This document shows positions 37,977 to 63,413 of a stretch of DNA of 64,000 bases, piece by piece (position 1 is the first letter of the stretch; each line of letters begins with the position of its first letter). Made by a program: the position numbers and the translations under genes. The stretch spans positions 186,001 to 250,000 of IMG/VR virus record IMGVR_UViG_3300026078_000017. One strand, 5' to 3'. Under the pieces are notes generated by a model that saw only the letters and a program-made list of their open reading frames with translations, ran no database searches and was not told where the DNA came from.

Positions 37977-38019
37977 AGGAACCCCCGTGAAGTGATTATT
38001 TGCTGTGGCTGCGCCTAAG

Positions 38020-40008
38020 TTACGCAGAGTCTTTTCCTGTGGTTGCTGTGTCATTCTTACTCTCGGGTTGTGTGTGCTTGACAACCTCGCGTCCACCCTT
38101 GAACACGTAGGTTCGGCCAACGCTATCAGCATACACCTTAACAATCACCTTGTACGTCATTTCGTCATCCAAACCGAAAGGCTTGTCGTTTCGATAAAGA
38201 ATCTGACCGAAACCCATCGTCAGGGCATTGTCAAGGTCAACCAGGCTGATGGTCTCTTCCTCGGTATCAAAGTGATACTTGCGGTCGTACTTGTTGTACC
38301 CACGAGGACAACCAATCATACTGTCAGCGTCAATCTTCTTGATGCTATACATGGTGTTCTTGATTCCAACAATGTCACCCACCTGGATGGCATCCATGAA
38401 ATCACGAGTACGTTCCTCGTCATAAACCAACGTTCCAGCCTCATAGTCCGCTTCCTGCTCAGGCGAAAGCTTCTCGAAAAGCTTGATCTGTGCCATGAGC
38501 AAATCCTGGCTGGACTGCTGCATCCCGTTATACTTGAAGTCATCCGGGTTGTACTTGCGATCGGTCGTGATAATGTCCTCACGAGTCTCAATCAAGGTCA
38601 ACGGAAGACCATCAGGTCCAATAGGACCATTTCCAGAAGCTGCCGCAGTATCTTCCTCGGTACTTCCCTCGACAGGCGTGGCAACAGGAGCTGCCTCAAC
38701 CACAGGCTCAGAAACCGCGACCTCTTCAACCGACTTAGACTTTTTCTTGGTAGCCATTGTATCTCTCCGATTGCTTACATCTTCGCACGTTTCTTCAGCT
38801 TGTGCAAGGACATTCTCGTTTGTATCTATATTCCATAGATTTGCCTTGGATGTTCTTGTCCGTGTAAATCCAAGAGACCGCAACTTCTCAGCCAAAAGCT
38901 GAGACTTGTAGGTTGCAAAATCCTTGATGTCATGACTTTGATACCACGACTTACGCTTCTCTGCAACCCATGCCAAGGAAACCAAAGTTTTTCCAGGTTT
39001 AAGACTGGAGAAAAATAAGGAGTCAACCTGTTCAACCATCTCCAGGTCATTTTTGATCCCTTTCTTCTCCAACCACTTACAGTAATTCTTGTTTACATTT
39101 TCTGAACTGGAGTTGTACACGGGATATCTCATGACTGATACCACGATTCCACGAAGCTCCTTGTCATCAAAGGTTTCAGGATTTTCCAGACAAGCCTTGT
39201 AGTGAACTGCCAAAGCCATCAAGTCTTCATAGGTCGCTACTCCCTTTGCCCTGTGAGAAGACAACATTCGATGGATGGTGATGTTGCGAACACCTGAAGG
39301 GATTTTAACTCCTTCATCTATTTTAGCCTTAACGTCAGCAATGGGATTTTTGTGCCAGGATTCGAATATTGGGTCTGCCACCTGAACGTCAGCACTGAAA
39401 AGGTTTTTCTTCTTGGGCTTTCTTGGACGTCGACTCTTTTGCATCTCGTCATGAGATTTCTTGGTCATGTCCAAGATATGTTTTGGAAGGTCAACAATAG
39501 GTTCATTTAATCCATAAATGAGTTCATAGAATTTTCCTGACTTATGTTTGCTTGGAGGAACAATAACATAACCTGAGGAACCCTTGATGTCGACCTTGCT
39601 GGCAACACCAGAATATGAACAACTTACTGGAACATCACTCCAGTACCAAAAGTGATATCCACCAGATCCAGTACGATAACTGAAGGTTCTTGGAAGAGAC
39701 TTGATTATCTCGTGTTCTACTTGATCAACGTCTACAACAACCAGGTATTTGCCTGTCTTTGAGGATTTCTGACCTGTGATGACAGCGTAATTAACACTAC
39801 GTTTTCCAGCCATCTTGTTGAATTTCTCAAGGTTGTTGGTGGCAAGCTTTTTCCATCCGAAGTTGAGAAATGGATGTTTTCCTGGTGTACGACAAGTCTC
39901 CTTGTTTCGACAGGTACATTTACAGTTTTCATCAACTGAGTGAACTGGGAATATTTGTAAATCGCAGTCTTCTACGAAGTATTTGAGTATGTCTTCGACA
40001 GGGAACAT
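38020..40008 (-). CDS. Bifunctional primase/polymerase (Prim-Pol + PriCT-1-like) with an unrelated acidic C-terminal module
   Basis: C.C....C..PGKHP, NYAVITG, LVVVDVD, RTGSGGYH.WY, DIKG..GYV.VPPS.H.SG; GVRN PriCT motif. Internal ATG 38757 with GGAG RBS. Confidence 0.85.
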   Translation of the reverse strand: MFPVEDILKYFVEDCDLQIFPVHSVDENCKCTCRNKETCRTPGKHPFLNFGWKKLATNNLEKFNKMAGKRSVNYAVITGQKSSKTGKYLVVVDVDQVEHEIIKSLPRTFSYRTGSGGYHFWYWSDVPVSCSYSGVASKVDIKGSSGYVIVPPSKHKSGKFYELIYGLNEPIVDLPKHILDMTKKSHDEMQKSRRPRKPKKKNLFSADVQVADPIFESWHKNPIADVKAKIDEGVKIPSGVRNITIHRMLSSHRAKGVATYEDLMALAVHYKACLENPETFDDKELRGIVVSVMRYPVYNSSSENVNKNYCKWLEKKGIKNDLEMVEQVDSLFFSSLKPGKTLVSLAWVAEKRKSWYQSHDIKDFATYKSQLLAEKLRSLGFTRTRTSKANLWNIDTNENVLAQAEETCEDVSNRRDTMATKKKSKSVEEVAVSEPVVEAAPVATPVEGSTEEDTAAASGNGPIGPDGLPLTLIETREDIITTDRKYNPDDFKYNGMQQSSQDLLMAQIKLFEKLSPEQEADYEAGTLVYDEERTRDFMDAIQVGDIVGIKNTMYSIKKIDADSMIGCPRGYNKYDRKYHFDTEEETISLVDLDNALTMGFGQILYRNDKPFGLDDEMTYKVIVKVYADSVGRTYVFKGGREVVKHTQPESKNDTATTGKDSA

Positions 40009-52441: not shown

Positions 52442-52455
52442 AGCACTCCCCTAGT

Positions 52456-53397
52456 TTATGGGATTGGTAATAAAATGGGCAAAGACAAGGGATCTGGACA
52501 AGCCCACACAGGAGCATCAACCCATACCGGAATCCTACCAGAAAACCAAATCTTGTAGAAAATGGTCTTGTAGTCATTCCCACCAACATATTGACCGTCA
52601 GCCGTAAGAGAGTGAGTTACTACCCTGTAGTCCATCAAGGTCCCAACCAACCCACACAAAGGAAACTTCACATAAGTCTCCCCTGTCAAGTCACTAGAAC
52701 TCTGATGTATGTTGTTATTGGTGTTGTTGAAAAACCAGTGCTTCTGTCTTCTGGTCTCAACTACTCCAGGAATACCAGTTATCATGTCCGTGTCCAACCA
52801 GGCAATCTGGTGGAAGTTCACACTGTCCCCAGCAGAGAACCCTATCGACTGTCCATCTCCATTAAGAATCTTTGACCTTTTTGTCACATAGTCCCTTAAC
52901 CGAAGTCCCCCATGCTCCCGCATGTCCCAACGTTTCGTGTCCGTCATGGACTCCTCATAGTCATAACCAGTCAACTCCAACATTCCGTCCACATCCAAAA
53001 AACAATTCAATGTCAAAGTCGGTATGTACTTCGTCTCCTCAGGACTTCCCTTTGTGGTGTGATTTACAATATCTACCATAATGAACTTGTCCTTTAGGGC
53101 AGGAGGTAAGAAGTAGTGGTTAGGATAAGAGAAGGCGGTGCTTACAAACTGTAGGTCACACTTAACAGCCACCAGGTCACCTATCGTCGGAAGATAGTCC
53201 TCAAGCCCTCCTAGAGCCGGCAATAATACATTCTTGGGCGGTACATCCGGAAGATGTGTCACAACAAGTCTCCGACCATCAAAATATCTCCAAGAGGCAT
53301 GATATATCGACATGTACAATCTACCAGAACCATACTCATTAACCCGCGCACGAGTAAACCACTTGTCCATGATAAATGCATTCCGACACCCCCGCAT
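52456..53397 (-). CDS. Hypothetical protein with LPTIGDLV-type beta modules
   Basis: Tracked ORF 52456..53508; start moved to ATG 53397, 6 nt after a TATTTA motif. Confidence 0.55.
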   Translation of the reverse strand: MRGCRNAFIMDKWFTRARVNEYGSGRLYMSIYHASWRYFDGRRLVVTHLPDVPPKNVLLPALGGLEDYLPTIGDLVAVKCDLQFVSTAFSYPNHYFLPPALKDKFIMVDIVNHTTKGSPEETKYIPTLTLNCFLDVDGMLELTGYDYEESMTDTKRWDMREHGGLRLRDYVTKRSKILNGDGQSIGFSAGDSVNFHQIAWLDTDMITGIPGVVETRRQKHWFFNNTNNNIHQSSSDLTGETYVKFPLCGLVGTLMDYRVVTHSLTADGQYVGGNDYKTIFYKIWFSGRIPVWVDAPVWACPDPLSLPILLPIP

Positions 53398-53531
53398 ACC
53401 ATTTAAATAGATGACCACAAATACCCAAATCAACTTATTCCCAAATATCCACTTATTGCCAATATGAACAAATGCCAATATCAATAAAACAAATATCCAT
53501 ATAACCAATAATCAACCCACCATAATAAAAC

Positions 53532-53633
53532 ATGCTCATCATCCCAGGATCCCTAGAAGCACTCGCCATCCTCATAGTCACCCTCACTATGGCATATACC
53601 CTCTTCTACCTCCTCTCAGATAATGACCACTAA
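53532..53633 (+). CDS. Putative 33-aa single-pass membrane peptide
   Basis: MLIIPGSLEALAILIVTLTMAYTLFYLLSDNDH*; manual translation. Confidence 0.35.
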   Translation: MLIIPGSLEALAILIVTLTMAYTLFYLLSDNDH

Positions 53634-53799
53634 CCCATAAAGACACTGAGTGGCGAGAGTGAGAGATACAGAGAGAGAGAACACACCCACGTCCTCCCCT
53701 AAGATTTTCTGAGATTTATCAGGCGTTTTTCTTCGCAAAGTTTCAGAAGTTGACAAAAGGGTGAGACCCAACCCCTAATTTACACCTCCACCCTCTTTT

Positions 53800-53895
53800 G
53801 GAATTCCCAGGTTTCCCCTTAGTTCTCAGACACTTACAAAGATTTCCCTAAAGAGTGTGGTTTTGGGTGTGTTTAGAATTCCCTAAGGAATTCCA
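53800..53895. repeat. Cluster of AATTCCC-type imperfect repeats
   Basis: GGAATTCCCAGG, AGATTTCCCTAAAG, AGAATTCCCTAAGGAATTCC. Confidence 0.5.
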
Positions 53896-53965
53896 TATGT
53901 GGCGGCAGTTCTGGTTTCTCTTTTGGGGATTACACAAGATTTGAGGTTGATACCAAAATATCCTT

Positions 53966-55375
53966 ATGCGAAATTCCTCCTCCAAGTCCAAGTCCCCGGT
54001 TTCTAAGAAAACCAAACAGCCAAGGAAACACCTGGCAAAACAGCAGGCCAAAAACAACAAGAAGATGTCTTCCAAAAAGCAGCAGACTCAGAAGGAGAGT
54101 CTGTTAAGCCTGAAGTCTGGTGGGACATTTCCTAGAAGTGTAAGTTCTTCTTCTGCTGGTACCTGGAGTGTTCAACCAGTTTCCTCCACCGGAATACCTT
54201 CCACAAGCAACAGCACCACATTTGAACTAAAGAAGGCAATGTCCTCTCGACTCTTACACAAGGTCAAGGCATTTACTCCTGGGGAGATGGTTTTGAAAAA
54301 GCTAGCTGTGATGGAGTACATCGACCTGTACCTGAGGATTCTGAAAAAGGTGAACTCCACAAACACGCCATCCCTTGGAGGTTTAGGGGGAAGTCCAAAT
54401 GTGGTTATTGCCACTTCTGGGTACTCGGTGTCTCTCAGTCCAATCACCACTTCCACGCCAATGTCCACAAGCACCTCAGTGTCTGTTGGTGGTAGTAAAC
54501 CAATAAACCTGGGTTCGGCTTTTACACACATTGGTGGGTCGTCTTCTCCTTCCTCAGGTGCCTCGGTTGAACTTACCATTCTCCCACAACCCCAGTTTTC
54601 TAAAATAGACATGGAAGTCACCTTCGACGGGTCAGAGCTTGAAGAGGTAGTTTACAAAACCAAAAGCAAGCAAGCCGAGCCAGCCAAGTCAACCGCAAAG
54701 AAGGCAACCAAAAAGCTGGCCCAGGAGAAGGAAGGACCAATAACCAAGTCCTTGAGAGAAGCCACAGAAGGGTTGCCATCCTTTGCCAATATGTCCCCGG
54801 CAGGCATCCTGGGAACCTTGATTTCCGATAACCTAAACCCTGGGTTGAAGGATGCTGGAAATCTGGAAAGAGACATCACCAAGTCAACCTCTGCCACGGA
54901 CGTGATCTTTGCCGAAATGCTCCTGTGTGTGTCCAAGCCTTTTTTGAAAAAGAGGGACATCGAAAAGGAACAGGAAGAAGTCGAAAAACAACTCACCTTC
55001 AAGTTTCATGGACAAGGAGACAGGTCAGACTCTTCTTCCTCCATTACACCAGAACACCTCAGGGACTACGACCTGTCGAAACTGGAAAACCTGGAAGTCA
55101 CCACAGACCACACAGAAGACAGCGATGAAGAAGACCCAAAAGGGCTTTGGTCCAAGTCACTCGACACCGGCGGATTCACCTTTTCTGGAAGTTCTGCTGG
55201 GTATTTCGGAGAAGCCAACACGATCTTTCAGGAGTTCTGGAACCTTGAGAAAAACTGCAAGGTCGAGGTTGCCCTGAGTGCCTTTGAACCAAAACACCTG
55301 GAGGTCTATGACCCACAGGGGATTCACAAAAACTGGAAGTCCCTGTCAACCTTGAAGAAAGACCTTGGCGAGTAG
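53966..55375 (+). CDS. Low-complexity K/S/T-rich, largely disordered protein (469 aa)
   Basis: Long ORF; basic N-terminus, S/T tracts, acidic C-terminus. Confidence 0.65.
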   Translation: MRNSSSKSKSPVSKKTKQPRKHLAKQQAKNNKKMSSKKQQTQKESLLSLKSGGTFPRSVSSSSAGTWSVQPVSSTGIPSTSNSTTFELKKAMSSRLLHKVKAFTPGEMVLKKLAVMEYIDLYLRILKKVNSTNTPSLGGLGGSPNVVIATSGYSVSLSPITTSTPMSTSTSVSVGGSKPINLGSAFTHIGGSSSPSSGASVELTILPQPQFSKIDMEVTFDGSELEEVVYKTKSKQAEPAKSTAKKATKKLAQEKEGPITKSLREATEGLPSFANMSPAGILGTLISDNLNPGLKDAGNLERDITKSTSATDVIFAEMLLCVSKPFLKKRDIEKEQEEVEKQLTFKFHGQGDRSDSSSSITPEHLRDYDLSKLENLEVTTDHTEDSDEEDPKGLWSKSLDTGGFTFSGSSAGYFGEANTIFQEFWNLEKNCKVEVALSAFEPKHLEVYDPQGIHKNWKSLSTLKKDLGE

Positions 55376-55380
55376 TTCCC

Positions 55381-55956
55381 GTGAGTTCCTCAATCGCCAA
55401 GTTCCAAAAAGTCCTAAGAGACGCAGCTCGGTATCAAATCATCAAAAGGATGAACGAGATCGAGGCCGAAACAGACTTTGAGTCCAGTTGTTACCTTGCT
55501 GAGTCTACAAATAGTGTTGACATAACCCCCGAGATAACCAAAATGGCAAACCCAAGTTCTGACGATGAGAAACCCCTGGATGCAGACCTTCACGAAACCC
55601 TTAGGGCCAAGTATGGGACCTATGCTATTCCAAAATACATGTATGGTCAAGCTTTGGCACAAGGCAGTCTTTACAAAAGAAACGACAAGGGTGTTCCGGA
55701 CTGGGACAGAGGCAGAGTTACTTCCTCTTCTGGTATAGGAGACCCAAACCAGTATCTCTTCACCCAAAGTAACACAACGATTCCCTTGAACTACGCCTTC
55801 AAGACTGGTGACATCATTCTGATAACTTCAAGCCCACAGGCAGAACAGCCCTGGCAAAACGTCCTGGTGCTCCACAATAACGCCAGAGCCAGACTTTACA
55901 CAAACCCCGAGATTCTGTTGTACTGGGACCTTGTGAGCGAACCTGAGGTCAAGTAA
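55381..55956 (+). CDS. Hypothetical protein with C-terminal FKTGDIIL array-type domain
   Basis: ORF track; C-terminal motif similarity to array proteins. Confidence 0.6.
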   Translation: MSSSIAKFQKVLRDAARYQIIKRMNEIEAETDFESSCYLAESTNSVDITPEITKMANPSSDDEKPLDADLHETLRAKYGTYAIPKYMYGQALAQGSLYKRNDKGVPDWDRGRVTSSSGIGDPNQYLFTQSNTTIPLNYAFKTGDIILITSSPQAEQPWQNVLVLHNNARARLYTNPEILLYWDLVSEPEVK

Positions 55957-56236
55957 GGGATTTCAAAGTCCAAAATTCTCCCGGGAATTTTTTCCACAGG
56001 GAAATTCCCCAGGAAATTTTTTCCAAAATTGAAATTGGAATTTGAAAATTGACTTGCGCCAAAAAGTACAGGGGTCAAGCCTATTAACACAATAGGAACC
56101 CCCGGTCATTATGGACGTGGGGGGGTGGGGTCAATTTGATACCCCTGGTAGGGGTGGGGGTCAATACCCCCAATTGACGGGTATCAAGTTCGATACAGTG
56201 TCAAGTGTAGGTATCAAACGAGATACCTTGACAAGG
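55957..56236. repeat. Repeat/palindrome-rich non-coding element (origin or terminus candidate)
   Basis: GG[GA]AATTTTTTCC at 55983 and 56012; GGGAAATTCCCC at 55999; GGGGTCAA at 56071, 56127, 56157; GTATCAA at 56181, 56211; four G-tracts 56119-56160. Confidence 0.7.
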
Positions 56237-56256
56237 CATGTGATGTATGCTAGGGT
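56228..56256 (+). promoter_or_regulatory. Sigma70-type early promoter
   Basis: TTGACA-N17-TAGGGT with TGC just before -10; ATG at 56262. Confidence 0.7.
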
Positions 56257-56261
56257 GTATC

Positions 56262-56471
56262 ATGTCTGAGTGGCATCACAACTGGCAGCCTGGGTATCTA
56301 TATAGGTGCATACATCATCATGGCACATGGATTGCACCTGGCGACTTAGTTTTGTTATTGAATGAAGGTGGTGATGGTCGGTATGAGGTGTATCACTTCC
56401 GTCTTGGACAGAAGGCATTGGTATTGCATCATGATGCGGTGTGGCATTTTAAGTTAGAAGCCAAGCTTTGA
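56262..56471 (+). CDS. Small SH3/KOW-like array protein
   Basis: WQPGYLY...APGDLVLLL...YEVYHF. Confidence 0.6.
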   Translation: MSEWHHNWQPGYLYRCIHHHGTWIAPGDLVLLLNEGGDGRYEVYHFRLGQKALVLHHDAVWHFKLEAKL

Positions 56472-56752
56472 GGGTCAACATGGAAAATTGTTCTACTGAG
56501 GAGAAGGAGCATTTGTCTTTAACCAACATGCCTAGGGTTGGCGACTTGGTTTGGTTACCGAATTACTACACTCCGCACTTATATCTTGTGATACAAAATC
56601 CGGTAGTATCATGGTTGAACTCTACTGATGGATATTTGGTGGAGTTTTTGTGTGTTGACATGGTGACGCAGAGAAAAGGACTTCAGTGTTTCGAGCAGTA
56701 TCCCGATATTTGTATCGATAGCGATTATCGGATCATGTCGAGGTTTTGTTGA
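56468..56752 (+). CDS. Small SH3/KOW-like array protein
   Basis: MPRVGDLVW...LYLVI. Confidence 0.6.
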   Translation: MRVNMENCSTEEKEHLSLTNMPRVGDLVWLPNYYTPHLYLVIQNPVVSWLNSTDGYLVEFLCVDMVTQRKGLQCFEQYPDICIDSDYRIMSRFC

Positions 56753-56777
56753 CATGTTGTCATGGGTCTGCTAGTGT
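56749..56777 (+). promoter_or_regulatory. Sigma70-type early promoter
   Basis: TTGACA-N17-TAGTGT with TGC; GTG start at 56784. Confidence 0.7.
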
Positions 56778-56783
56778 GAGAGG

Positions 56784-57017
56784 GTGGAAGAGAACGTTGG
56801 AAAGTTATTGAGGGCGAAGGGATCCTGTCGAGCCTGGGCTTTGGTCTCAGTTGGGGAAGTGATTTGTCTTATCCATCCTTCGGATATCATTTTGGTCTTG
56901 AGGTGGCATAACTCACATTTTATTGTGTGGGACTTGACACAGCAATGCATGTACGAGGTTTTCTTTCTAGATTTTGCGCGTATGGACTGGGAAGAGGTAA
57001 CGAGTGAAGGATTCTGA
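56784..57017 (+). CDS. Small SH3/KOW-like array protein
   Basis: VGKLL...HPSDIILVL...FIVWDL. Confidence 0.55.
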   Translation: MEENVGKLLRAKGSCRAWALVSVGEVICLIHPSDIILVLRWHNSHFIVWDLTQQCMYEVFFLDFARMDWEEVTSEGF

Positions 57018-57312
57018 CTTTGGTGGGCTTTATAAGCCTTTGAGACGTGTTCCTAGGGCTGGGGATATTCTCTTGCAGGATTTTCCTCGGTGGGCTAGTG
57101 GCGAGCTTGGAATCTACATGGTAACCTCAGAGCCTGCATATCACACCACCAAGAGTCCATATTTGCCGCCAGGGACTTTAATTTGGCACATTGACTTGTG
57201 GAACTTGGTTGACTATGGATTTACGTGGTGGGAGCCGCAGGGTTTGGAAGATGGTAAGTTGACTTCTGAGAGTGTGCAAGGGTGGTATTTGGCGACTTAT
57301 GACAAAGTCTAG
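57004..57312 (+). CDS. Small SH3/KOW-like array protein
   Basis: VPRAGDIL...IYMVTSEP...LWNL. Confidence 0.6.
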   Translation: MKDSDFGGLYKPLRRVPRAGDILLQDFPRWASGELGIYMVTSEPAYHTTKSPYLPPGTLIWHIDLWNLVDYGFTWWEPQGLEDGKLTSESVQGWYLATYDKV

Positions 57313-57616
57313 CAAAAATCTTGTGCCGGCAACCTTTGTGCCAGAGGTTGGGGAGATTTATAGGATTAAGGGAAATTATGGCCGTGGCAATAGCAGCGTG
57401 CCATTTTACACAATCAATGACCGTTTGTCAGGGGATTTTAGTTTCTTGCACACGGGTGATCTTGTTCTTTTTCTTTGTGAGGAGGAGAATTCTCACTGGA
57501 AAGGCACGCCTTATGCTTGTAAGTGGTGGAAGGTCTTTGACTTGAAGAATCTTTTGGTTGGACATATCATGGATGACACCAGGACGATTGAGAGCTTGTC
57601 TAAGGACTTGGCATGA
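57299..57616 (+). CDS. Small SH3/KOW-like array protein
   Basis: VPEVGEIY...LHTGDLVLFL...WKVFDL...GHI. Confidence 0.6.
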   Translation: MTKSSKNLVPATFVPEVGEIYRIKGNYGRGNSSVPFYTINDRLSGDFSFLHTGDLVLFLCEEENSHWKGTPYACKWWKVFDLKNLLVGHIMDDTRTIESLSKDLA

Positions 57617-57879
57617 AAATTGACTTACAGGTTGGCGACGTGTTTCAGACCAAAGCCACAAGTCACGCGTGGATTGGGCCAAAGTATTTGTTACTTGACA
57701 AATGTCCGATTGAACCAAAATACGGCAATTTTGAGTCGGCGTTTGCACTTGACCTTGACAAGTGTGAATGTTTCAGGTTTGCTATTGCGAGCGACAGCAC
57801 ACAGTTGACCATGGGTTATGAGTTAACGGTTTGGTCTATGTCAGGCAAGATGAAAATCTATACCAGTGAAATGTTATGA
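57613..57879 (+). CDS. Small SH3/KOW-like array protein
   Basis: LQVGDVF...YLLL...ALDL; ATGA overlap. Confidence 0.6.
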   Translation: MKIDLQVGDVFQTKATSHAWIGPKYLLLDKCPIEPKYGNFESAFALDLDKCECFRFAIASDSTQLTMGYELTVWSMSGKMKIYTSEML

Positions 57880-58169
57880 CGTGTGAGTGCAAAAACTGTT
57901 GTTTCGTCCGCAAGCAAGAATTGCCTATGTGGACCTTTGGTGAACGTCCACCGAGGGTTGGTGACCATATCTTTCTTGACACGCCATCCAACATTTTCAG
58001 ACGACACAAGGCATCACACTTGATACTTTCGATTGACGAGCATGAAGATGAGTGGAAAATGTTCAAGTATTTTACACAGACGATTCAATACATGGACGGC
58101 AAGGATTCTAGGTCGCCATTGAATCTCAAAGTCACAGACAGTTATTGGTTGCTTGGAAGTGTGGATTGA
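57876..58169 (+). CDS. Small SH3/KOW-like array protein
   Basis: PPRVGDHI...HLIL; ATGA overlap. Confidence 0.6.
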   Translation: MTCECKNCCFVRKQELPMWTFGERPPRVGDHIFLDTPSNIFRRHKASHLILSIDEHEDEWKMFKYFTQTIQYMDGKDSRSPLNLKVTDSYWLLGSVD

Positions 58170-58177
58170 GGTATACT
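58149..58177 (+). promoter_or_regulatory. Sigma70-type promoter
   Basis: TTGCTT-N17-TATACT; ATG at 58189. Confidence 0.55.
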
Positions 58178-58188
58178 AGGTAATTGCG

Positions 58189-58461
58189 ATGTTTGAGAGA
58201 CCTTTATTTCCTCCTGTGTGTGAGTCTGGCATGTTATATGTGGTAACACACGCCATGCCATTTTACAAAAATTGTTTTGTAAATGTTCCACCTGACCTAT
58301 TGCCAACGATGTTGACTGGTCACAAGGTTTTGCCTCTTGGACCGATTCATGCACTTGAGTACAACTTCCAGCAAATATGGAATTTGACGTCAGGACATAT
58401 TGGGTTTGTGTTTGGTCCAACCACTTATCACTTTAGGAAGCTTGAGGAAGATGGCTTATAA
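58189..58461 (+). CDS. Small SH3/KOW-like array protein
   Basis: ESGMLY...IWNL.SGHIGFV. Confidence 0.55.
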   Translation: MFERPLFPPVCESGMLYVVTHAMPFYKNCFVNVPPDLLPTMLTGHKVLPLGPIHALEYNFQQIWNLTSGHIGFVFGPTTYHFRKLEEDGL

Positions 58462-58711
58462 CGAGCAAAAGCCTGAGGCTGGTGATGTGTGGATTGTCAC
58501 AAAGACAAGTGGCACTTATGTAAGTGTACCTGCCAGCATTTTCGGTTCCAACGAACATCGTGTAGCAAAACATATACCATATGGCACGTATGTTTTGTTT
58601 CTTGAGAATGCACAATTTAAGAATGCAAATGGCACTGCCATTATGGTAAATGGAGAAAAATGTTGGGTATCTCCGTATTATCTTCACGGAATAAGCCCGA
58701 TTCGAGGATGA
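58451..58711 (+). CDS. Small SH3/KOW-like array protein (paralogue of 58715)
   Basis: PEAGDVWIV...IPYGTYVLFLE...KCWV; GAGGA RBS. Confidence 0.65.
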   Translation: MAYNEQKPEAGDVWIVTKTSGTYVSVPASIFGSNEHRVAKHIPYGTYVLFLENAQFKNANGTAIMVNGEKCWVSPYYLHGISPIRG

Positions 58712-58714
58712 CTT

Positions 58715-58978
58715 ATGAGAGGCGCAAAGTTACCAAAAAAGGGTGACATCTGGATTGTCAAGTCACATTCGGTTTATGTGAGGGTTCCAGGCGCGTCACC
58801 TTATGCGGATATCACTACTCGATACGCAATTCCTGTGCCATACGGGTCATACCTCTTATTTCTTGAAGATATGCGGGATTTTCCAGAGCAGGTTGAAGTT
58901 TTGTGGAAAAATCAAAAGTGTTGGATAACATTTAGTTATGTGACTCAACACATGCAAGACATGGAGAGATTGAAGTGA
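58715..58978 (+). CDS. Small SH3/KOW-like array protein (paralogue of 58451)
   Basis: PKKGDIWIV...VPYGSYLLFLE...KCWI. Confidence 0.65.
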   Translation: MRGAKLPKKGDIWIVKSHSVYVRVPGASPYADITTRYAIPVPYGSYLLFLEDMRDFPEQVEVLWKNQKCWITFSYVTQHMQDMERLK

Positions 58979-59289
58979 CGATGACACCAGAAGAAAAAGA
59001 CAACTTGACAAGCGTTTTCTACCTGCTCATGCGGGATTATGTTCCAACTGGCACAATTGCAAAGCTCGTGCAGGACTTGGAGAAACATCCAGGTCCGCAC
59101 GAGTTTACGAGCAAGTATCTTGCGGCTTACGCTGGCGAGCTTGTAGAACGCATCGCTAAGGTGCCGCAAAGCCCTTCTTCCAATAAACCTTCGCCTTCCT
59201 TGGAAAGTCTACGGAAGGAGATTGAGGTTTTGCGGCAGAAGATTGCCGAGATGGGTCCGATTCGGAATGACGGTTTCCAGGACCCGTAA
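58975..59289 (+). CDS. Hypothetical helical protein
   Basis: GTGA overlap; helical, does not carry the array motif. Confidence 0.6.
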   Translation: MTMTPEEKDNLTSVFYLLMRDYVPTGTIAKLVQDLEKHPGPHEFTSKYLAAYAGELVERIAKVPQSPSSNKPSPSLESLRKEIEVLRQKIAEMGPIRNDGFQDP

Positions 59290-60425: not shown

Positions 60426-60752
60426 TTAGCGTCCAACCACTGACACAGGACAACCATGCGTCAAAAGAAAATCTTGACGACGAAGTGGAGAAGTGTGCCA
60501 AAATTCTGTTCGCAATCGAACGATGCAGGAAATCCGGGAAATTGGTTCACGTGAACATAACATTGGCACAACAATTGGCAGACATTGATCAAGCATACGA
60601 TAGCCGTGTGACTGCACGCGGTCTTCACCAGCACCATAAATAGGACCTGACGCAAAAGATCCACGATCAAGTCGAGTCACGTAAACACGCGGTCCACAAC
60701 CGCTTCCAAGACTGCTGAATAGAACCAACAGAACTAACAGAAAACTTTTCAT
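60426..60752 (-). CDS. Putative lipoprotein / secreted Cys-rich small protein
   Basis: MKSFLLVLLVLFSSLGSG-C signal with lipobox-like Cys; upstream TTGACT-N16-TAAAGT promoter. Confidence 0.5.
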   Translation of the reverse strand: MKSFLLVLLVLFSSLGSGCGPRVYVTRLDRGSFASGPIYGAGEDRVQSHGYRMLDQCLPIVVPMLCSREPISRISCIVRLRTEFWHTSPLRRQDFLLTHGCPVSVVGR

Positions 60753-60757
60753 CCTAC

Positions 60758-60816
60758 ACTTTATCACACCTTCCCAATGAGTCAAGGATTGACATTGGCT
60801 TTCTTTCTGCTACTCT
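60758..60816. promoter_or_regulatory. Back-to-back divergent sigma70 promoters
   Basis: GTCAA-gga-TTGAC inverted repeat (60781-60793) supplies both -35 boxes; minus TTGACT-N16-TAAAGT, plus TTGACA-N16-TACTCT. Confidence 0.6.
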
Positions 60817-61626: not shown

Positions 61627-61952
61627 CTTTCATCAACCTGAAAAATCTTGTGGATGTTCAGCCTGGAACGTTGCTGAAAGCTCGGGGGTGTGAGGGAAGC
61701 TTTGCCTTGGTTCTTGAGCCACCCACACTAAACACAACACAAACAAACAGTGATACTTCTTTTCACCTAAATTGTAACTGTTGGCATATTTCTGAGAAGA
61801 GTCTTTACGGTACGAAAAGACAACCAACCGATTTACCAAAGCCAGATTTTCTCACCATAAAAATGCACTTCTTTCCACATCAGGGATTAAGTCTGGCGAC
61901 ATGTGTCGGATGGGAAATATACGACGGTGAGGACATAAATCATGGAACTTGA
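61623..61952 (+). CDS. Small SH3/KOW-like array protein
   Basis: VQPGTLL...FALVLEPP...CW. Confidence 0.6.
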   Translation: MTFINLKNLVDVQPGTLLKARGCEGSFALVLEPPTLNTTQTNSDTSFHLNCNCWHISEKSLYGTKRQPTDLPKPDFLTIKMHFFPHQGLSLATCVGWEIYDGEDINHGT

Positions 61953-62175
61953 TCGACTACCACAAATCGGCGAGACATGGACGGTCAAGGAAGATCACCA
62001 AGCTTTCGCCATTGACCAAAACTACAAGCCGTGGCGATTTGTACCAGGTATGTATATTCTCTTCCTTGATACAGTCAGGTCACTAGACATAACAGATGAA
62101 TCAACACCCATTCTGTGTCAAGGTGTACGTTATCACATCATGCGACTCTATATCAGGGCCTTAGTACCTCTGTGA
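61942..62175 (+). CDS. Small SH3/KOW-like array protein
   Basis: LPQIGETWTV...VPGMYILFLD. Confidence 0.6.
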   Translation: MELDRLPQIGETWTVKEDHQAFAIDQNYKPWRFVPGMYILFLDTVRSLDITDESTPILCQGVRYHIMRLYIRALVPL

Positions 62176-62817: not shown

Positions 62818-63111
62818 ATGTTTCACAAAGGTACAGTAAAAAAACTGAAACTGCTTAAAGAAGTTCCCAAGAATGGCACGCTTCTTGTTCAGCAGCACAA
62901 CAATGGCAATAATGTGTCGCTTGATTTTTCTCTCTATCTGGTCTTGGATTCTGAGTATATCGCGACTCGACGTGACTGGCGCTTAAATCTATGGTGTATC
63001 ACAGCAGGATATAACACAAGGTGGAATCCTCCGGGCTTTCCAAATGGAAAGCTAAATCTTGACTGGACAACAGGACCCGTTAAGTGGTATGTGTTTAGTG
63101 AGCCCGAATGA
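62818..63111 (+). CDS. Small SH3/KOW-like array protein
   Basis: VPKNGTLL...LYLVL...LWCI; start moved to the ATG after the promoter. Confidence 0.6.
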   Translation: MFHKGTVKKLKLLKEVPKNGTLLVQQHNNGNNVSLDFSLYLVLDSEYIATRRDWRLNLWCITAGYNTRWNPPGFPNGKLNLDWTTGPVKWYVFSEPE

Positions 63112-63413
63112 CACGTCAGAAGAAAGTCAAGCATTTACCTGGCAAGATTCTTGAAATGCGTGCCAATGGATGTGTGATGTATTTTTTCTCAGATGAAGAC
63201 AATAATACTTCCAACCTCAAACACCTTCACAAGGGAAATCTCTTTATGATACTTGACACGGTCAAGTCAGAGGATGTTCCAGGCGAAGCCTGGCAAAAAA
63301 GCAACCCTCAAGAAAAGTGGTGTCGAGTTTGGCACTTCAAGTCTAATCTGATTGGATACATTGCCCTAGAGGACATAATCGTCTTCACAGAAGAAACTCG
63401 GTGGTTGACATGA
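63108..63413 (+). CDS. Small SH3/KOW-like array protein
   Basis: LPGKIL...LHKGNLFMILD...RVWHF...IGYI. Confidence 0.6.
   Translation: MTRQKKVKHLPGKILEMRANGCVMYFFSDEDNNTSNLKHLHKGNLFMILDTVKSEDVPGEAWQKSNPQEKWCRVWHFKSNLIGYIALEDIIVFTEETRWLT

What the first reader, a model, noticed from the sequence alone, without database searches (positions are those of the whole stretch)
52450..57600. Mirror-image strand-composition switch centred on a palindromic G-tract element: origin or genome end
Seen by eye: the plus strand is very C/A-rich at 52.5-53.7 kb and G/T-rich from 56.2 kb. At 55957-56236 lie phased A/T tracts (GGRAATTTTTTCC x2), three GGGGTCAA, several GTATCAA/GTGTCAA/TTGATAC, hairpins GGGGTCAATTTGATACCCC and GGGGGTCAATACCCCC, and four G-runs able to form a G-quadruplex. 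Inference: a bidirectional replication origin with iterons and a G4, or the terminal/packaging junction at the first-injected end.
Basis: partly seen in the sequence, partly recalled or inferred. Interest (0 to 1): 0.6.

Follow-up and report, generated by a model that had tools for sequence, protein, structure and literature searches.

The report
Early-gene control region of jumbo phage
The odd G-rich, hairpin-rich 300-bp spacer is real and conserved in three related giant phages. The part that can be read is a regulated promoter at the head of a block of small early genes; a replication origin is not shown but cannot be excluded.

Summary
The window lies in a 320-kb uncultured myovirus-type jumbo phage. 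It has the densest cluster of G/C runs in the genome. It sits exactly at the sharpest local GC/keto-skew switch of the whole genome at 1.5-6 kb scale.

Two relatives (L036, L043) have the same layout:
- A/T-tract palindromes;
- a single-copy 51-nt core that is 88-92% identical while its surroundings are at random-level identity;
- G/C-run hairpins;
- a GTATC-N6-GATAC palindrome that abuts TTGACA;
- TGnTAnnnT, then 5-8 nt, then the ATG of the first gene of a tandem array of small SH3-like paralogues.

That promoter belongs to a class of 54 sites in the genome (0-4 in shuffles). The element's copy is the first of the promoter-dense region at 242-304 kb.

The features cited for an origin are not conserved: GGGGTCAA occurs three times only in this phage, and the four G-tracts are missing in one relative. 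The skew is confined to about 3 kb, and the detrended skew minimum lies at 174.7 kb. No read-end data exist.

Best reading: a regulated early-region control element (confidence 0.55). An origin, possibly primed by transcription, is the main rival (about 0.2).

The parts
52456..53508 (-). 350-aa ORF. Only the C-terminal ~260 aa are conserved, so the true start is probably near 53,240-53,300. It forms the left C/A-rich block of the plus strand.
   Evidence: Coding-strand GC3 skew +0.29 and keto3 +0.33. Orthologues in L002, L036, L038 and L043 at 51-77% identity.
53509..53965 (.). Divergent intergenic region IG1. It is C/A-rich on the plus strand. It holds GGAATTCC-type palindromes (about 53800, 53876, 53887), TTGACA followed by a GGGT-GAG-ACCC hairpin (53749-53769), and a small conserved plus-strand membrane-peptide ORF (53533-53634).
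   Evidence: The homologous region of relative L002 ends in G/C-run palindromes. The small ORF is also readable in L036.
53966..55956 (+). Two co-oriented genes: a 469-aa basic, low-complexity protein, and a 191-aa protein with an SH3-like 'GD[IV]' C-terminus. They are barely skewed and separate the two skewed blocks.
   Evidence: Orthologues in L036 (465 and 175 aa) and L043 (368 and 204 aa). No Pfam or PHROG hit. The Atlas model is disordered.
55973..56048 (.). A/T-tract palindromes of the type GGRAA-T(3-7)-CC: 55983-55995, 55999-56010, 56012-56024, with a partial copy at 56038-56044. The upstream part of the element has 36% GC.
   Evidence: Relatives have 3-5 motifs of the same type at the same place, but these are only partly alignable.
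56071..56121 (+). Single-copy conserved 51-nt core. Its blocks are GGGGTCAAGCC, 10-11 variable nt, ATAGGAACCCCC, 2 variable nt, TCATTATGGACGTGGG.
   Evidence: 88-92% identity among the three phages, against 46-65% for the rest of the element (random is 50 +/- 2%). One copy per genome by nhmmer. No Rfam hit.
56119..56171 (+). G/C-run hairpin cluster: G7-T-G4, hairpins at 56127-56145 and 56156-56171, and the direct repeat GGGG(G)TGGGG(G)TCAAT 30 bp apart.
   Evidence: In all three phages a G/C hairpin starts at the 3' end of the core, but the sequences differ. The four G-tracts are absent in L036.
56180..56227 (.). Two 16-18-bp palindromes GGTATC-N6-GATAC(C), at 56180-56196 and 56210-56227, 30 bp apart. 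The second abuts the -35 box.
   Evidence: These are the only two GTATC-N6-GATAC sites in the 320-kb genome (0 in shuffles). L043 has two, 29 bp apart, and L036 has one in its element. The arms are invariant, the spacers differ, and the last copy always abuts TTGAC.
56228..56264 (+). Promoter P2: TTGACA (56228-56233), 17-nt spacer, TGc-TAGGGT (56248-56256), 5 nt, ATG (56262-56264). The geometry is of the leaderless type.
   Evidence: Member of a class of 54 sites (0-4 in shuffles). 32 of them have a start codon 3-12 nt downstream, with the mode at 6 nt. The same geometry is found in L036 (TTGACT-16-TGgTATAGT-5-ATG) and L043 (TTGACA-17-TGaTATGGT-8-ATG).
56262..58978 (+). Tandem array of nine small (69-114 aa) SH3-like paralogues plus one unrelated small ORF. 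This is the G/T-rich right block. A second promoter of the same class lies at 56749-56783.
   Evidence: Family HMM hits. AlphaFold pLDDT 85.8, with SH3 domains as the best, weak matches. These genes have the highest keto3/GC3 skew in the genome, falling with distance. The array has 8 genes in L043 and about 3 in L036.

Best explanation
The element is the control region at the head of the phage's early, host-polymerase-transcribed region.

Shown:
- Its 3' end is a sigma-70-type extended -10 promoter (P2). P2 is placed so that transcription should start at or next to the ATG of the first gene of a tandem array of small SH3-like genes.
- P2 is the leftmost of a dense set of such promoters, which fills 242-304 kb.
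- Unlike the other 53 sites, P2 is abutted by a palindrome, GTATC-N6-GATAC, that occurs nowhere else in the genome.

Inferred:
- The palindromes are operators for a dimeric DNA-binding protein that switches P2.
- The A/T-tract palindromes upstream bend the DNA or bind a factor.
- The single-copy 51-nt core and the G/C hairpin that follows it form a second regulatory site. This could be a protein-binding site, or the start of a leader RNA with a 5' stem-loop.
- The composition switch arises because the array genes carry a very G/T-rich non-template strand, including at third codon positions, and this fades with distance from the promoter. That is the pattern expected from transcription-linked C-to-T change. 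The left block is a divergently oriented unit of the same kind.
For: - Promoter class: 54 TTGACN-N16/17-TGnTAnnnT sites against 0-4 in shuffles and 1 in the reversed sequence. 32 have a start codon 3-12 nt downstream. 21 of those 32 lie at 242-304 kb, and none lies between 161 and 242 kb.
- The phage has a sigma-70-family gene, and no RNA polymerase was detected.
- P2 geometry and the abutting palindrome are conserved in L036 and L043, although the surrounding sequence is at random-level identity.
- In L036 the promoter class also begins at the element.
- Array genes have coding-strand GC3 skew of 0.28-0.43 and keto3 of 0.36-0.48, 3-4 sd above the genome mean, and the values decay along the array.
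- The same jump sits at the element in L043, and a weaker one in L036, where the array is short.
- Beyond the array, coding-strand skew returns to genome-typical values on both strands.
Against: - No transcript data exist, so no start site is mapped.
- The -10 of P2 in this phage (TAGGGT) is weak.
- The most conserved part, the 51-nt core, is not explained by a promoter. In a sigma-70 reading (TTAACA-17-CATTAT) the -35 falls in the variable block and the spacer is invariant. The ECF-like pattern GGAAC-N16-CGT is not a repeated class.
- A single-copy, highly conserved core at the sharpest skew switch, next to an A/T-rich tract, is also what an origin would look like.
- The left skewed block includes a plus-strand small ORF, so the rule 'the coding strand is G/T-rich' does not cover everything.
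Confidence: 0.55

Rival explanations
1. It is a replication origin, possibly activated or primed by transcription. The single-copy core and the palindromes would bind an initiator. The A/T-rich tract upstream would melt. Alternatively, a G-rich transcript from the element would form an R-loop on the C-rich template, as at T4 oriF/oriG or ColE1.
For: - The raw cumulative GC-skew minimum of the whole genome is at window 55,908.
- The sharpest local skew switch is at the element, and this is conserved in L043 and L036.
- The core is unique and 88-92% conserved.
- The upstream part has 36-43% GC.
- G clusters on the non-template strand are strong in the two phages with strong downstream G skew (this phage and L043) and weak in L036, where the skew is weak.
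- The large-scale change of gene orientation falls at 232-242 kb.
- Prim-Pol, an RNase-H-like gene and a PhoH-like gene lie 4-18 kb to the left.
Against: - The skew is confined to about 3 kb. The detrended minimum is at 174.7 kb, and GC3 skew changes sign many times along the genome.
- GGGGTCAA x3 is not conserved.
- There is no cluster of DnaA boxes and no DnaA gene.
- No recognisable initiator lies next to the element.
- From my own knowledge: replicons of the N15 RepA / P4 alpha Prim-Pol type have their origin in or beside that gene, which here is 16 kb away.
Confidence: 0.2
2. It is a structured RNA element: a 5' leader, the 3' end of the upstream operon, an antitermination or processing site, or a small RNA. 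The conserved core would be the recognised motif and the hairpins would act in the transcript.
For: - Fold z-scores for the region are -3.6 to -4.8.
- In all three phages a G/C hairpin begins at the end of the core, with different stem sequences.
- The core has conserved arms around a variable 10-11-nt centre.
Against: - No Rfam match.
- The leaders of L036 and L043 fold only at z = -2.2 and -1.65.
- The inner stem of the core is weakened, not compensated, in L036 and L043.
- The long-range helix seen in this phage and L036 is absent in L043.
- Palindromic protein sites give the same picture.
Confidence: 0.12
3. It is a packaging, terminal or injection-boundary site: the physical genome end or first-injected end, or a T5-like injection-stop region in front of the pre-early genes.
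For: - It is a unique, repeat-rich non-coding element directly in front of an array of small early-type genes.
- It is conserved in relatives.
Against: - Two independent assemblies of this phage, and the contigs of L036 and L043, run through the element without a break. The second assembly also bridges the record's ends, which overlap by about 126 nt.
- The T4-like portal and the Terminase_6N large subunit lie 112 and 71 kb away.
- Where assemblies of relatives do break, it is in the other intergenic region, IG1.
Confidence: 0.06

Closest known systems
Lambdoid early control regions (PR/OR, PL/OL): a sigma-70 promoter with palindromic operators
   Same: Host-polymerase promoter at the head of an early operon. 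Two or more palindromic sites with conserved arms and free spacers, the last one touching the -35 box. The sites are unique in the genome.
   Different: No repressor/Cro pair is identified. The operator is a 5-6-N6-5-6 palindrome with 29-30 bp spacing. Extra parts have no lambdoid counterpart: the 51-nt core, the G/C hairpins and the A/T-tract palindromes. The geometry is leaderless. The phage is a lytic-looking jumbo myovirus.
SPO1 host-takeover module and the T7 A1-A3 early promoters: strong host-type promoters in front of many small early genes
   Same: A block of small fast-evolving genes, each or nearly each with its own host-type promoter, at one boundary of the genome map. An extended TG -10, as is common in Gram-positive sigmaA promoters.
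   Different: No terminal redundancy or fixed end is shown here. The promoters sit 5-8 nt from the start codon. The paralogue family is SH3-like and unrelated to those phages' genes.
Transcription-dependent phage origins: T7 primary origin, T4 oriF/oriG, lambda ori
   Same: A promoter next to an A/T-rich tract at the early/middle boundary. Dyad-symmetric repeats. A G-rich non-template strand downstream that would favour an R-loop.
   Different: No initiator gene is adjacent. The repeats cited as iterons are not conserved. The skew is local only. There is no functional evidence.
T5 injection-stop region
   Same: A repeat- and palindrome-rich non-coding stretch bordering a block of small pre-early-type genes.
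   Different: T5 has fixed ends with long terminal repeats. Here the assemblies are circular and no end signal is available.

Membership tests
Sigma-70-type extended -10 promoter (leaderless class of this phage) | TTGACN, a 16-17-nt spacer, TGn and TAnnnT | tested here: met
   56228-56256. The class has 54 sites against 0-4 in shuffles.
Sigma-70-type extended -10 promoter (leaderless class of this phage) | Start codon of a real gene 3-12 nt after the -10 | tested here: met
   The ATG is 5 nt downstream. The gene is a member of the paralogue family.
Sigma-70-type extended -10 promoter (leaderless class of this phage) | Boxes and geometry conserved in relatives while the flanks diverge | tested here: met
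   L036 and L043.
Sigma-70-type extended -10 promoter (leaderless class of this phage) | Mapped transcription start | not testable with these tools
   No RNA run holds the sequence.
Palindromic operator of a dimeric regulator | Inverted arms conserved, spacer free, next to a promoter box, rare in the genome | tested here: met
   GTATC-N6-GATAC occurs only twice in 320 kb, and both copies are here. The arms are the same in L036 and L043, with different spacers, and the last copy abuts TTGAC.
Palindromic operator of a dimeric regulator | An identified binding protein | not tested
   No neighbouring gene has a recognisable DNA-binding domain.
Iteron-type replication origin | Three or more direct repeats (iterons) that are kept in relatives | tested here: not met
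   GGGGTCAA x3 and the GGGGTGGGGGTCAAT pair are specific to this phage. L036 and L043 have one GGGGTCAA each, inside the core.
Iteron-type replication origin | Adjacent A/T-rich unwinding region | tested here: inconclusive
   The upstream part has 36-43% GC, against 44% for the genome.
Iteron-type replication origin | Genome-wide skew extremum at the site | tested here: inconclusive
   The raw minimum is at 55,908, but the detrended minimum is at 174.7 kb and the profile is multiphasic.
Iteron-type replication origin | Initiator gene at or next to the site | tested here: not met
   Flanking proteins have no family hit. Prim-Pol is 16 kb away, and DnaB-like and DnaE genes are more than 160 kb away.
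G-quadruplex | Four G-tracts of 3 or more with loops of 1-7 nt | tested here: not met
   There is no canonical motif anywhere in the genome. The element would need a 20-nt loop. G4Hunter score 1.88, rank 2.
G-quadruplex | G-tract arrangement kept in relatives | tested here: not met
   Present in L043, absent in L036.
pac/cos or terminal site | Read-start pile-up or a fixed end at the site | not testable with these tools
   The only run is held as contigs.
pac/cos or terminal site | Position beside the terminase genes | tested here: not met
   The large terminase gene is at genome 169.8-171.4 kb, 71 kb away.
Known RNA family (Rfam 15) | Covariance-model match | tested here: not met
   No match at E <= 1 in 52-58 kb apart from a chance snoRNA hit elsewhere.

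The most novel reading that the evidence does not exclude
The single-copy 51-nt core, the G-cluster hairpins and the strongly G-rich non-template strand that follows them are together a transcription-primed (R-loop) replication origin, placed at the head of the early region of a DnaE/Prim-Pol jumbo phage lineage. The GTATC palindromes would gate it. This would explain why the sharpest composition switch of the genome sits exactly there in three phages.
Probability: 0.15. Interest if true: 0.65.

Novelty: new member of a known kind. Interest (0 to 1): 0.4.

Why it matters
Almost nothing is known about the cis-acting sites of uncultured jumbo phages. This work gives a concrete, testable map for one lineage:
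- a 54-member class of host-type promoters with leaderless geometry;
- the boundary of the early region;
- one uniquely regulated promoter;
- a 51-nt single-copy core kept at about 90% identity while neighbouring proteins have drifted to about 40%.

If the core turns out to be an origin or a new regulatory RNA or protein site, it would be a handle for replicons or expression switches in this group. If not, the result still shows that a striking local skew switch in a phage can come from one transcription unit rather than from replication.

Tried and rejected
- DNA and protein searches of cultured phages with the region and with the 469-aa protein found nothing.
- Scans of IMG/VR with the 469-aa, GroEL-like and 191-aa proteins found nothing.
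- The exact 19-mer hairpin has no match in IMG/VR.
- The genome-contig collection gave nothing for the core or for the 191-aa family.
- The 17-mer of the core hit L042, but that is an RCC1-repeat coding sequence of an unrelated phage. Rejected.
- TTGACAAGG looked enriched (19 copies), but the copies are coding.
- GGAATTCC-type motifs are not a genome-wide promoter motif.
- DnaA boxes: one relaxed match in the element and no cluster.
- The ECF-like pattern GGAAC-N16-CGT is at chance level in the genome.
- The sigma-70 reading of the core (TTAACA-17-CATTAT) does not fit the conservation pattern.
- The second GGAACCCCC at 37,978 lies inside a conserved gene.
- A long-range helix closing the leader is seen in this phage and in L036 but not in L043.
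- In a genome-wide MFE scan the element is in the top 10 windows, not the top one. The first attempt timed out.
- Read laying returned one contig with flat depth, so it gave no ends and no coverage slope.
- The 304-kb ENA contig of the L002-type relative could not be read, because no DNA is served for it.
- The ORF at 60426-60785 (-), which seemed to contradict a strand-wise skew, scores as non-coding.
- One search used a wrong frame for the first array gene. The values stand.
Full report
**What the window is**

The window is bases 186,001-250,000 of a 320,479-bp IMG/VR virus record. The record's ends overlap by about 126 nt. A second, independent assembly of the only public run that holds the sequence (a rhizosphere metagenome) is a single 320,363-bp contig that bridges those ends. 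The genome therefore assembles as a circle.

The gene content is that of a contractile-tailed jumbo phage:
- two sheath-like genes and a T4-like portal;
- a Terminase_6N large subunit at 169.8-171.4 kb;
- a DnaE-type polymerase, a DnaB-like helicase and a ribonucleotide reductase;
- a Prim-Pol at window 38,020-40,008;
- 38 tRNAs;
- one sigma-70-family gene, with no RNA polymerase and no DnaA detected.

**The observation**

The stretch 55,957-56,261 is non-coding. It lies between the stop codon of a 191-aa plus-strand gene and the ATG of the next plus-strand gene. It is not a divergence point of transcription.

The element is unusual in several measurable ways:
- It holds 8 G/C runs of at least 4 in 120 bp. 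The next best place in the genome holds 4, and such runs are about five-fold depleted genome-wide.
- It holds 3 of the 7 GGGGTCAA in the genome.
- It has a 29-30-bp periodicity (lag 30, z = 3.9), carried by three pairs of repeats.
- It folds better than shuffled versions of itself (z = -3.6 to -4.8).
- It has no second copy in the genome.

The composition switch is also real. At 1.5, 3 and 6 kb scales, the largest upward jump of GC skew and of keto skew in the whole genome falls at 55,900-56,100. The raw cumulative GC-skew minimum is at 55,908.

Three qualifications apply:
- The two skewed blocks are 52.5-53.75 kb and 56.0-58.2 kb. The 2 kb between them, which holds two plus-strand genes, is nearly unskewed, so the element is not the centre of a mirror.
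- For a circular genome with a net skew the curve must be detrended. The minimum then moves to 174.7 kb, and at 15-kb scale the main switch is at about 174 kb. Third-position skew changes sign many times along the genome.
- There is no canonical G4 motif. The four G-tracts would need a 20-nt loop, and they compete with hairpins formed with C-runs on the same strand.

**What lies beside the element**

Immediately to the right is a tandem array of nine small genes (69-114 aa). They share a P-x-x-G-D-[ILV] motif and form a 12-member family in this genome. An AlphaFold model (pLDDT 85.8) is a small beta-barrel whose best, weak matches are all SH3 domains. Neither the family nor the 469-aa protein has relatives outside this lineage in the 5.8-billion-protein word search.

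The array genes carry the most G/T-rich coding strands in the genome, including at third codon positions (GC3 skew 0.28-0.43, keto3 0.36-0.48). The values fall along the array. The first three genes even score poorly with the genome's own codon model. The left block is the minus-strand 350-aa gene plus a C/A-rich intergenic region.

**Relatives**

A PhoH-based scan found a syntenic relative, L002. Its contig stops in G/C-homopolymer palindromes in the intergenic region upstream of the 350-aa orthologue. Three of four assemblies of that phage stop within about 130 nt of the same place.

A profile of the 350-aa protein then found L036 in the metagenome collection. A profile of the 191-aa protein found L043 through the protein index. 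Both contigs run through the element.

All three phages have the same order of parts:
- the 350-aa gene on the minus strand;
- an intergenic region of 450-700 bp;
- two plus-strand genes;
- the element (256-346 bp);
- small plus-strand genes: 8 in tandem in L043 and about 3 in L036.

**Anatomy that is conserved**

(a) There are three to five A/T-tract palindromes of the form GGRAA-T(3-7)-CC. They are conserved in kind and only partly in sequence.

(b) There is a 51-nt core with three invariant blocks: GGGGTCAAGCC, ATAGGAACCCCC and TCATTATGGACGTGGG. The core is 88-92% identical between the phages. The rest of the element is at 46-65% (random expectation 50 +/- 2%), and the adjacent 191-aa protein is only about 40% identical. 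The core occurs once per genome.

(c) A G/C hairpin starts at the 3' end of the core in all three phages, with different sequences, and further G/C-run hairpins follow.

(d) GTATC-N6-GATAC palindromes follow: two in this phage 30 bp apart, two in L043 29 bp apart, and one, with an extra GATACC half-site just upstream, in L036. The arms are invariant, the spacers differ, and the last copy always abuts TTGAC. These are the only two such sites in the 320-kb genome.

(e) The promoter layout is TTGAC(A/T), 16-17 nt, TGn-TAnnnT, then 5-8 nt, then the ATG of the first small gene.

**Anatomy that is not conserved**

The three GGGGTCAA units and the duplicated GGGG(G)TGGGG(G)TCAAT are not conserved: the relatives have one GGGGTCAA, inside the core. 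The G7-T-G4...G4-T-G5 arrangement is absent in L036.

**The promoter class**

A scan for TTGACN-N16/17-TGnTAnnnT gives 54 sites in the genome. Mononucleotide shuffles give 0-4, and the reversed sequence gives 1. Of the 54 sites, 32 have the start codon of an ORF of at least 50 aa lying 3-12 nt downstream, with the mode at 6 nt; the controls have none.

This is therefore a real promoter class of the host sigma-70 type, with a geometry that predicts leaderless or nearly leaderless mRNAs. Of the 32 sites, 21 lie at genome 242-304 kb. None lies between 161 and 242 kb, and the element's promoter (242,228) is the first of the dense set. A second one stands before the third array gene (56,749). In L036 the class likewise begins at the element, and it is absent from the sequence to its left.

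This settles the 3' third of the element as an ordinary member of a known kind. That member carries a dedicated palindromic site next to its -35 box.

**How it most likely works**

Host polymerase starts at P2 early in infection and transcribes the SH3-like array. A dimeric protein that binds the GTATC palindromes turns P2 up or down. The A/T-tract palindromes and the core are further factor sites, or the start of a leader.

The very G/T-rich non-template strand, strongest next to the promoter and fading downstream, fits transcription-linked cytosine loss. The skew is confined to the transcription unit, because genes of both orientations beyond the array return to genome-typical values.

Shown: the promoter class, its conservation, the uniqueness and conservation of the palindrome and of the core, and the location and conservation of the skew jump. 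Inferred: early timing, operator function, and the cause of the skew.

**What this does not explain, and the rivals**

The core is the best-conserved piece, and it is not accounted for.
- A sigma-70 reading of the core puts the -35 box in the variable block.
- An ECF-like GGAAC-N16-CGT reading is unique to this site rather than a class.
- The inner stem of the core is not kept by compensating changes.

A single-copy conserved core next to an A/T-rich tract, dyad repeats and the sharpest skew jump is what an origin could look like. G clusters are strong in the two phages with strong downstream G skew and weak in the third. This keeps a transcription-primed origin alive at about 0.15-0.2.

Several points count against an origin:
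- the skew is local only;
- there is no initiator gene beside the element and no cluster of DnaA boxes;
- the supposed iterons are not conserved;
- the global profile is unlike the clear patterns described for about 60% of huge phages (PMC7162821).

A terminal or packaging role has no support from assemblies or from the terminase position, but it cannot be tested without raw reads. A structured-RNA role is possible but weakly supported.

**Verdict**

The thing is a unique, conserved cis element at a compositional boundary, but the readable part is a regulated early promoter, and the cited origin and G4 features do not hold up in relatives. Novelty: a new member of a known kind (a phage early control region), with one unexplained conserved core. 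Interest: 0.4.

Noticed in passing
whole genome; in the window e.g. 56228, 56749, 60785(-), 60789, 62779: A class of 54 TTGACN-N16/17-TGnTAnnnT promoters. 32 have a start codon 3-12 nt after the -10, which predicts widespread leaderless mRNAs. Several are back-to-back divergent pairs that share palindromic -35 boxes (e.g. genome 250,712 / 250,718).
   Followed up: partly
genome 137-165 kb (outside the window), plus 4 tRNAs at 0.1-4 kb and one at 256.7 kb: 38 tRNA genes, all on the minus strand. One has anticodon CUA (genome 139,981-140,057), which would read TAG. This hints at amber suppression or recoding in part of the genome.
   Followed up: no
window 53533-53634 (+); L036 in the homologous intergenic region: A conserved 33-35-aa hydrophobic small ORF, ending ...ND(H/N), inside the divergent intergenic region. 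It is on the strand opposite to the 350-aa gene.
   Followed up: partly
L002 1-260 (IMGVR_UViG_3300032118_002414) and three other assemblies of that phage: Contigs of the L002-type relative end in runs such as C11G13 and several GGGG...CCCC hairpins, in the intergenic region homologous to window 53.5-53.97 kb. Three of four assemblies stop within about 130 nt of each other there. L035 also stops in that region.
   Followed up: partly
window 56262-58978, 61942-62175, 63108-63413; genome 295,514-295,795: A lineage-specific family of small SH3-like proteins (12 copies). The number of tandem copies differs between relatives (9, 8, about 3). The 191-aa, 350-aa and 136-aa neighbours carry the same G-D-[ILV] motif.
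   Followed up: partly
window 56110-56269 (+): An ATG inside the conserved core opens a short frame that starts MDVG in all three phages, but its length is 52, 18 and 10 aa. The conservation is therefore at the nucleotide level and not that of a protein.
   Followed up: yes
genome 304,741; 265,681; 279,361; 290,251; 77,581: These windows fold more strongly than the element in the genome-wide scan (z = -3.1 to -4.3). The one at 77.5-77.7 kb is a long hairpin beside the ribonucleotide reductase and DnaB-like genes.
   Followed up: no
window 58975-59289 (+): The 104-aa gene that closes the array is the best-conserved gene to the right of the element (78% nucleotide identity with L036). It has no family assignment.
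   Followed up: no
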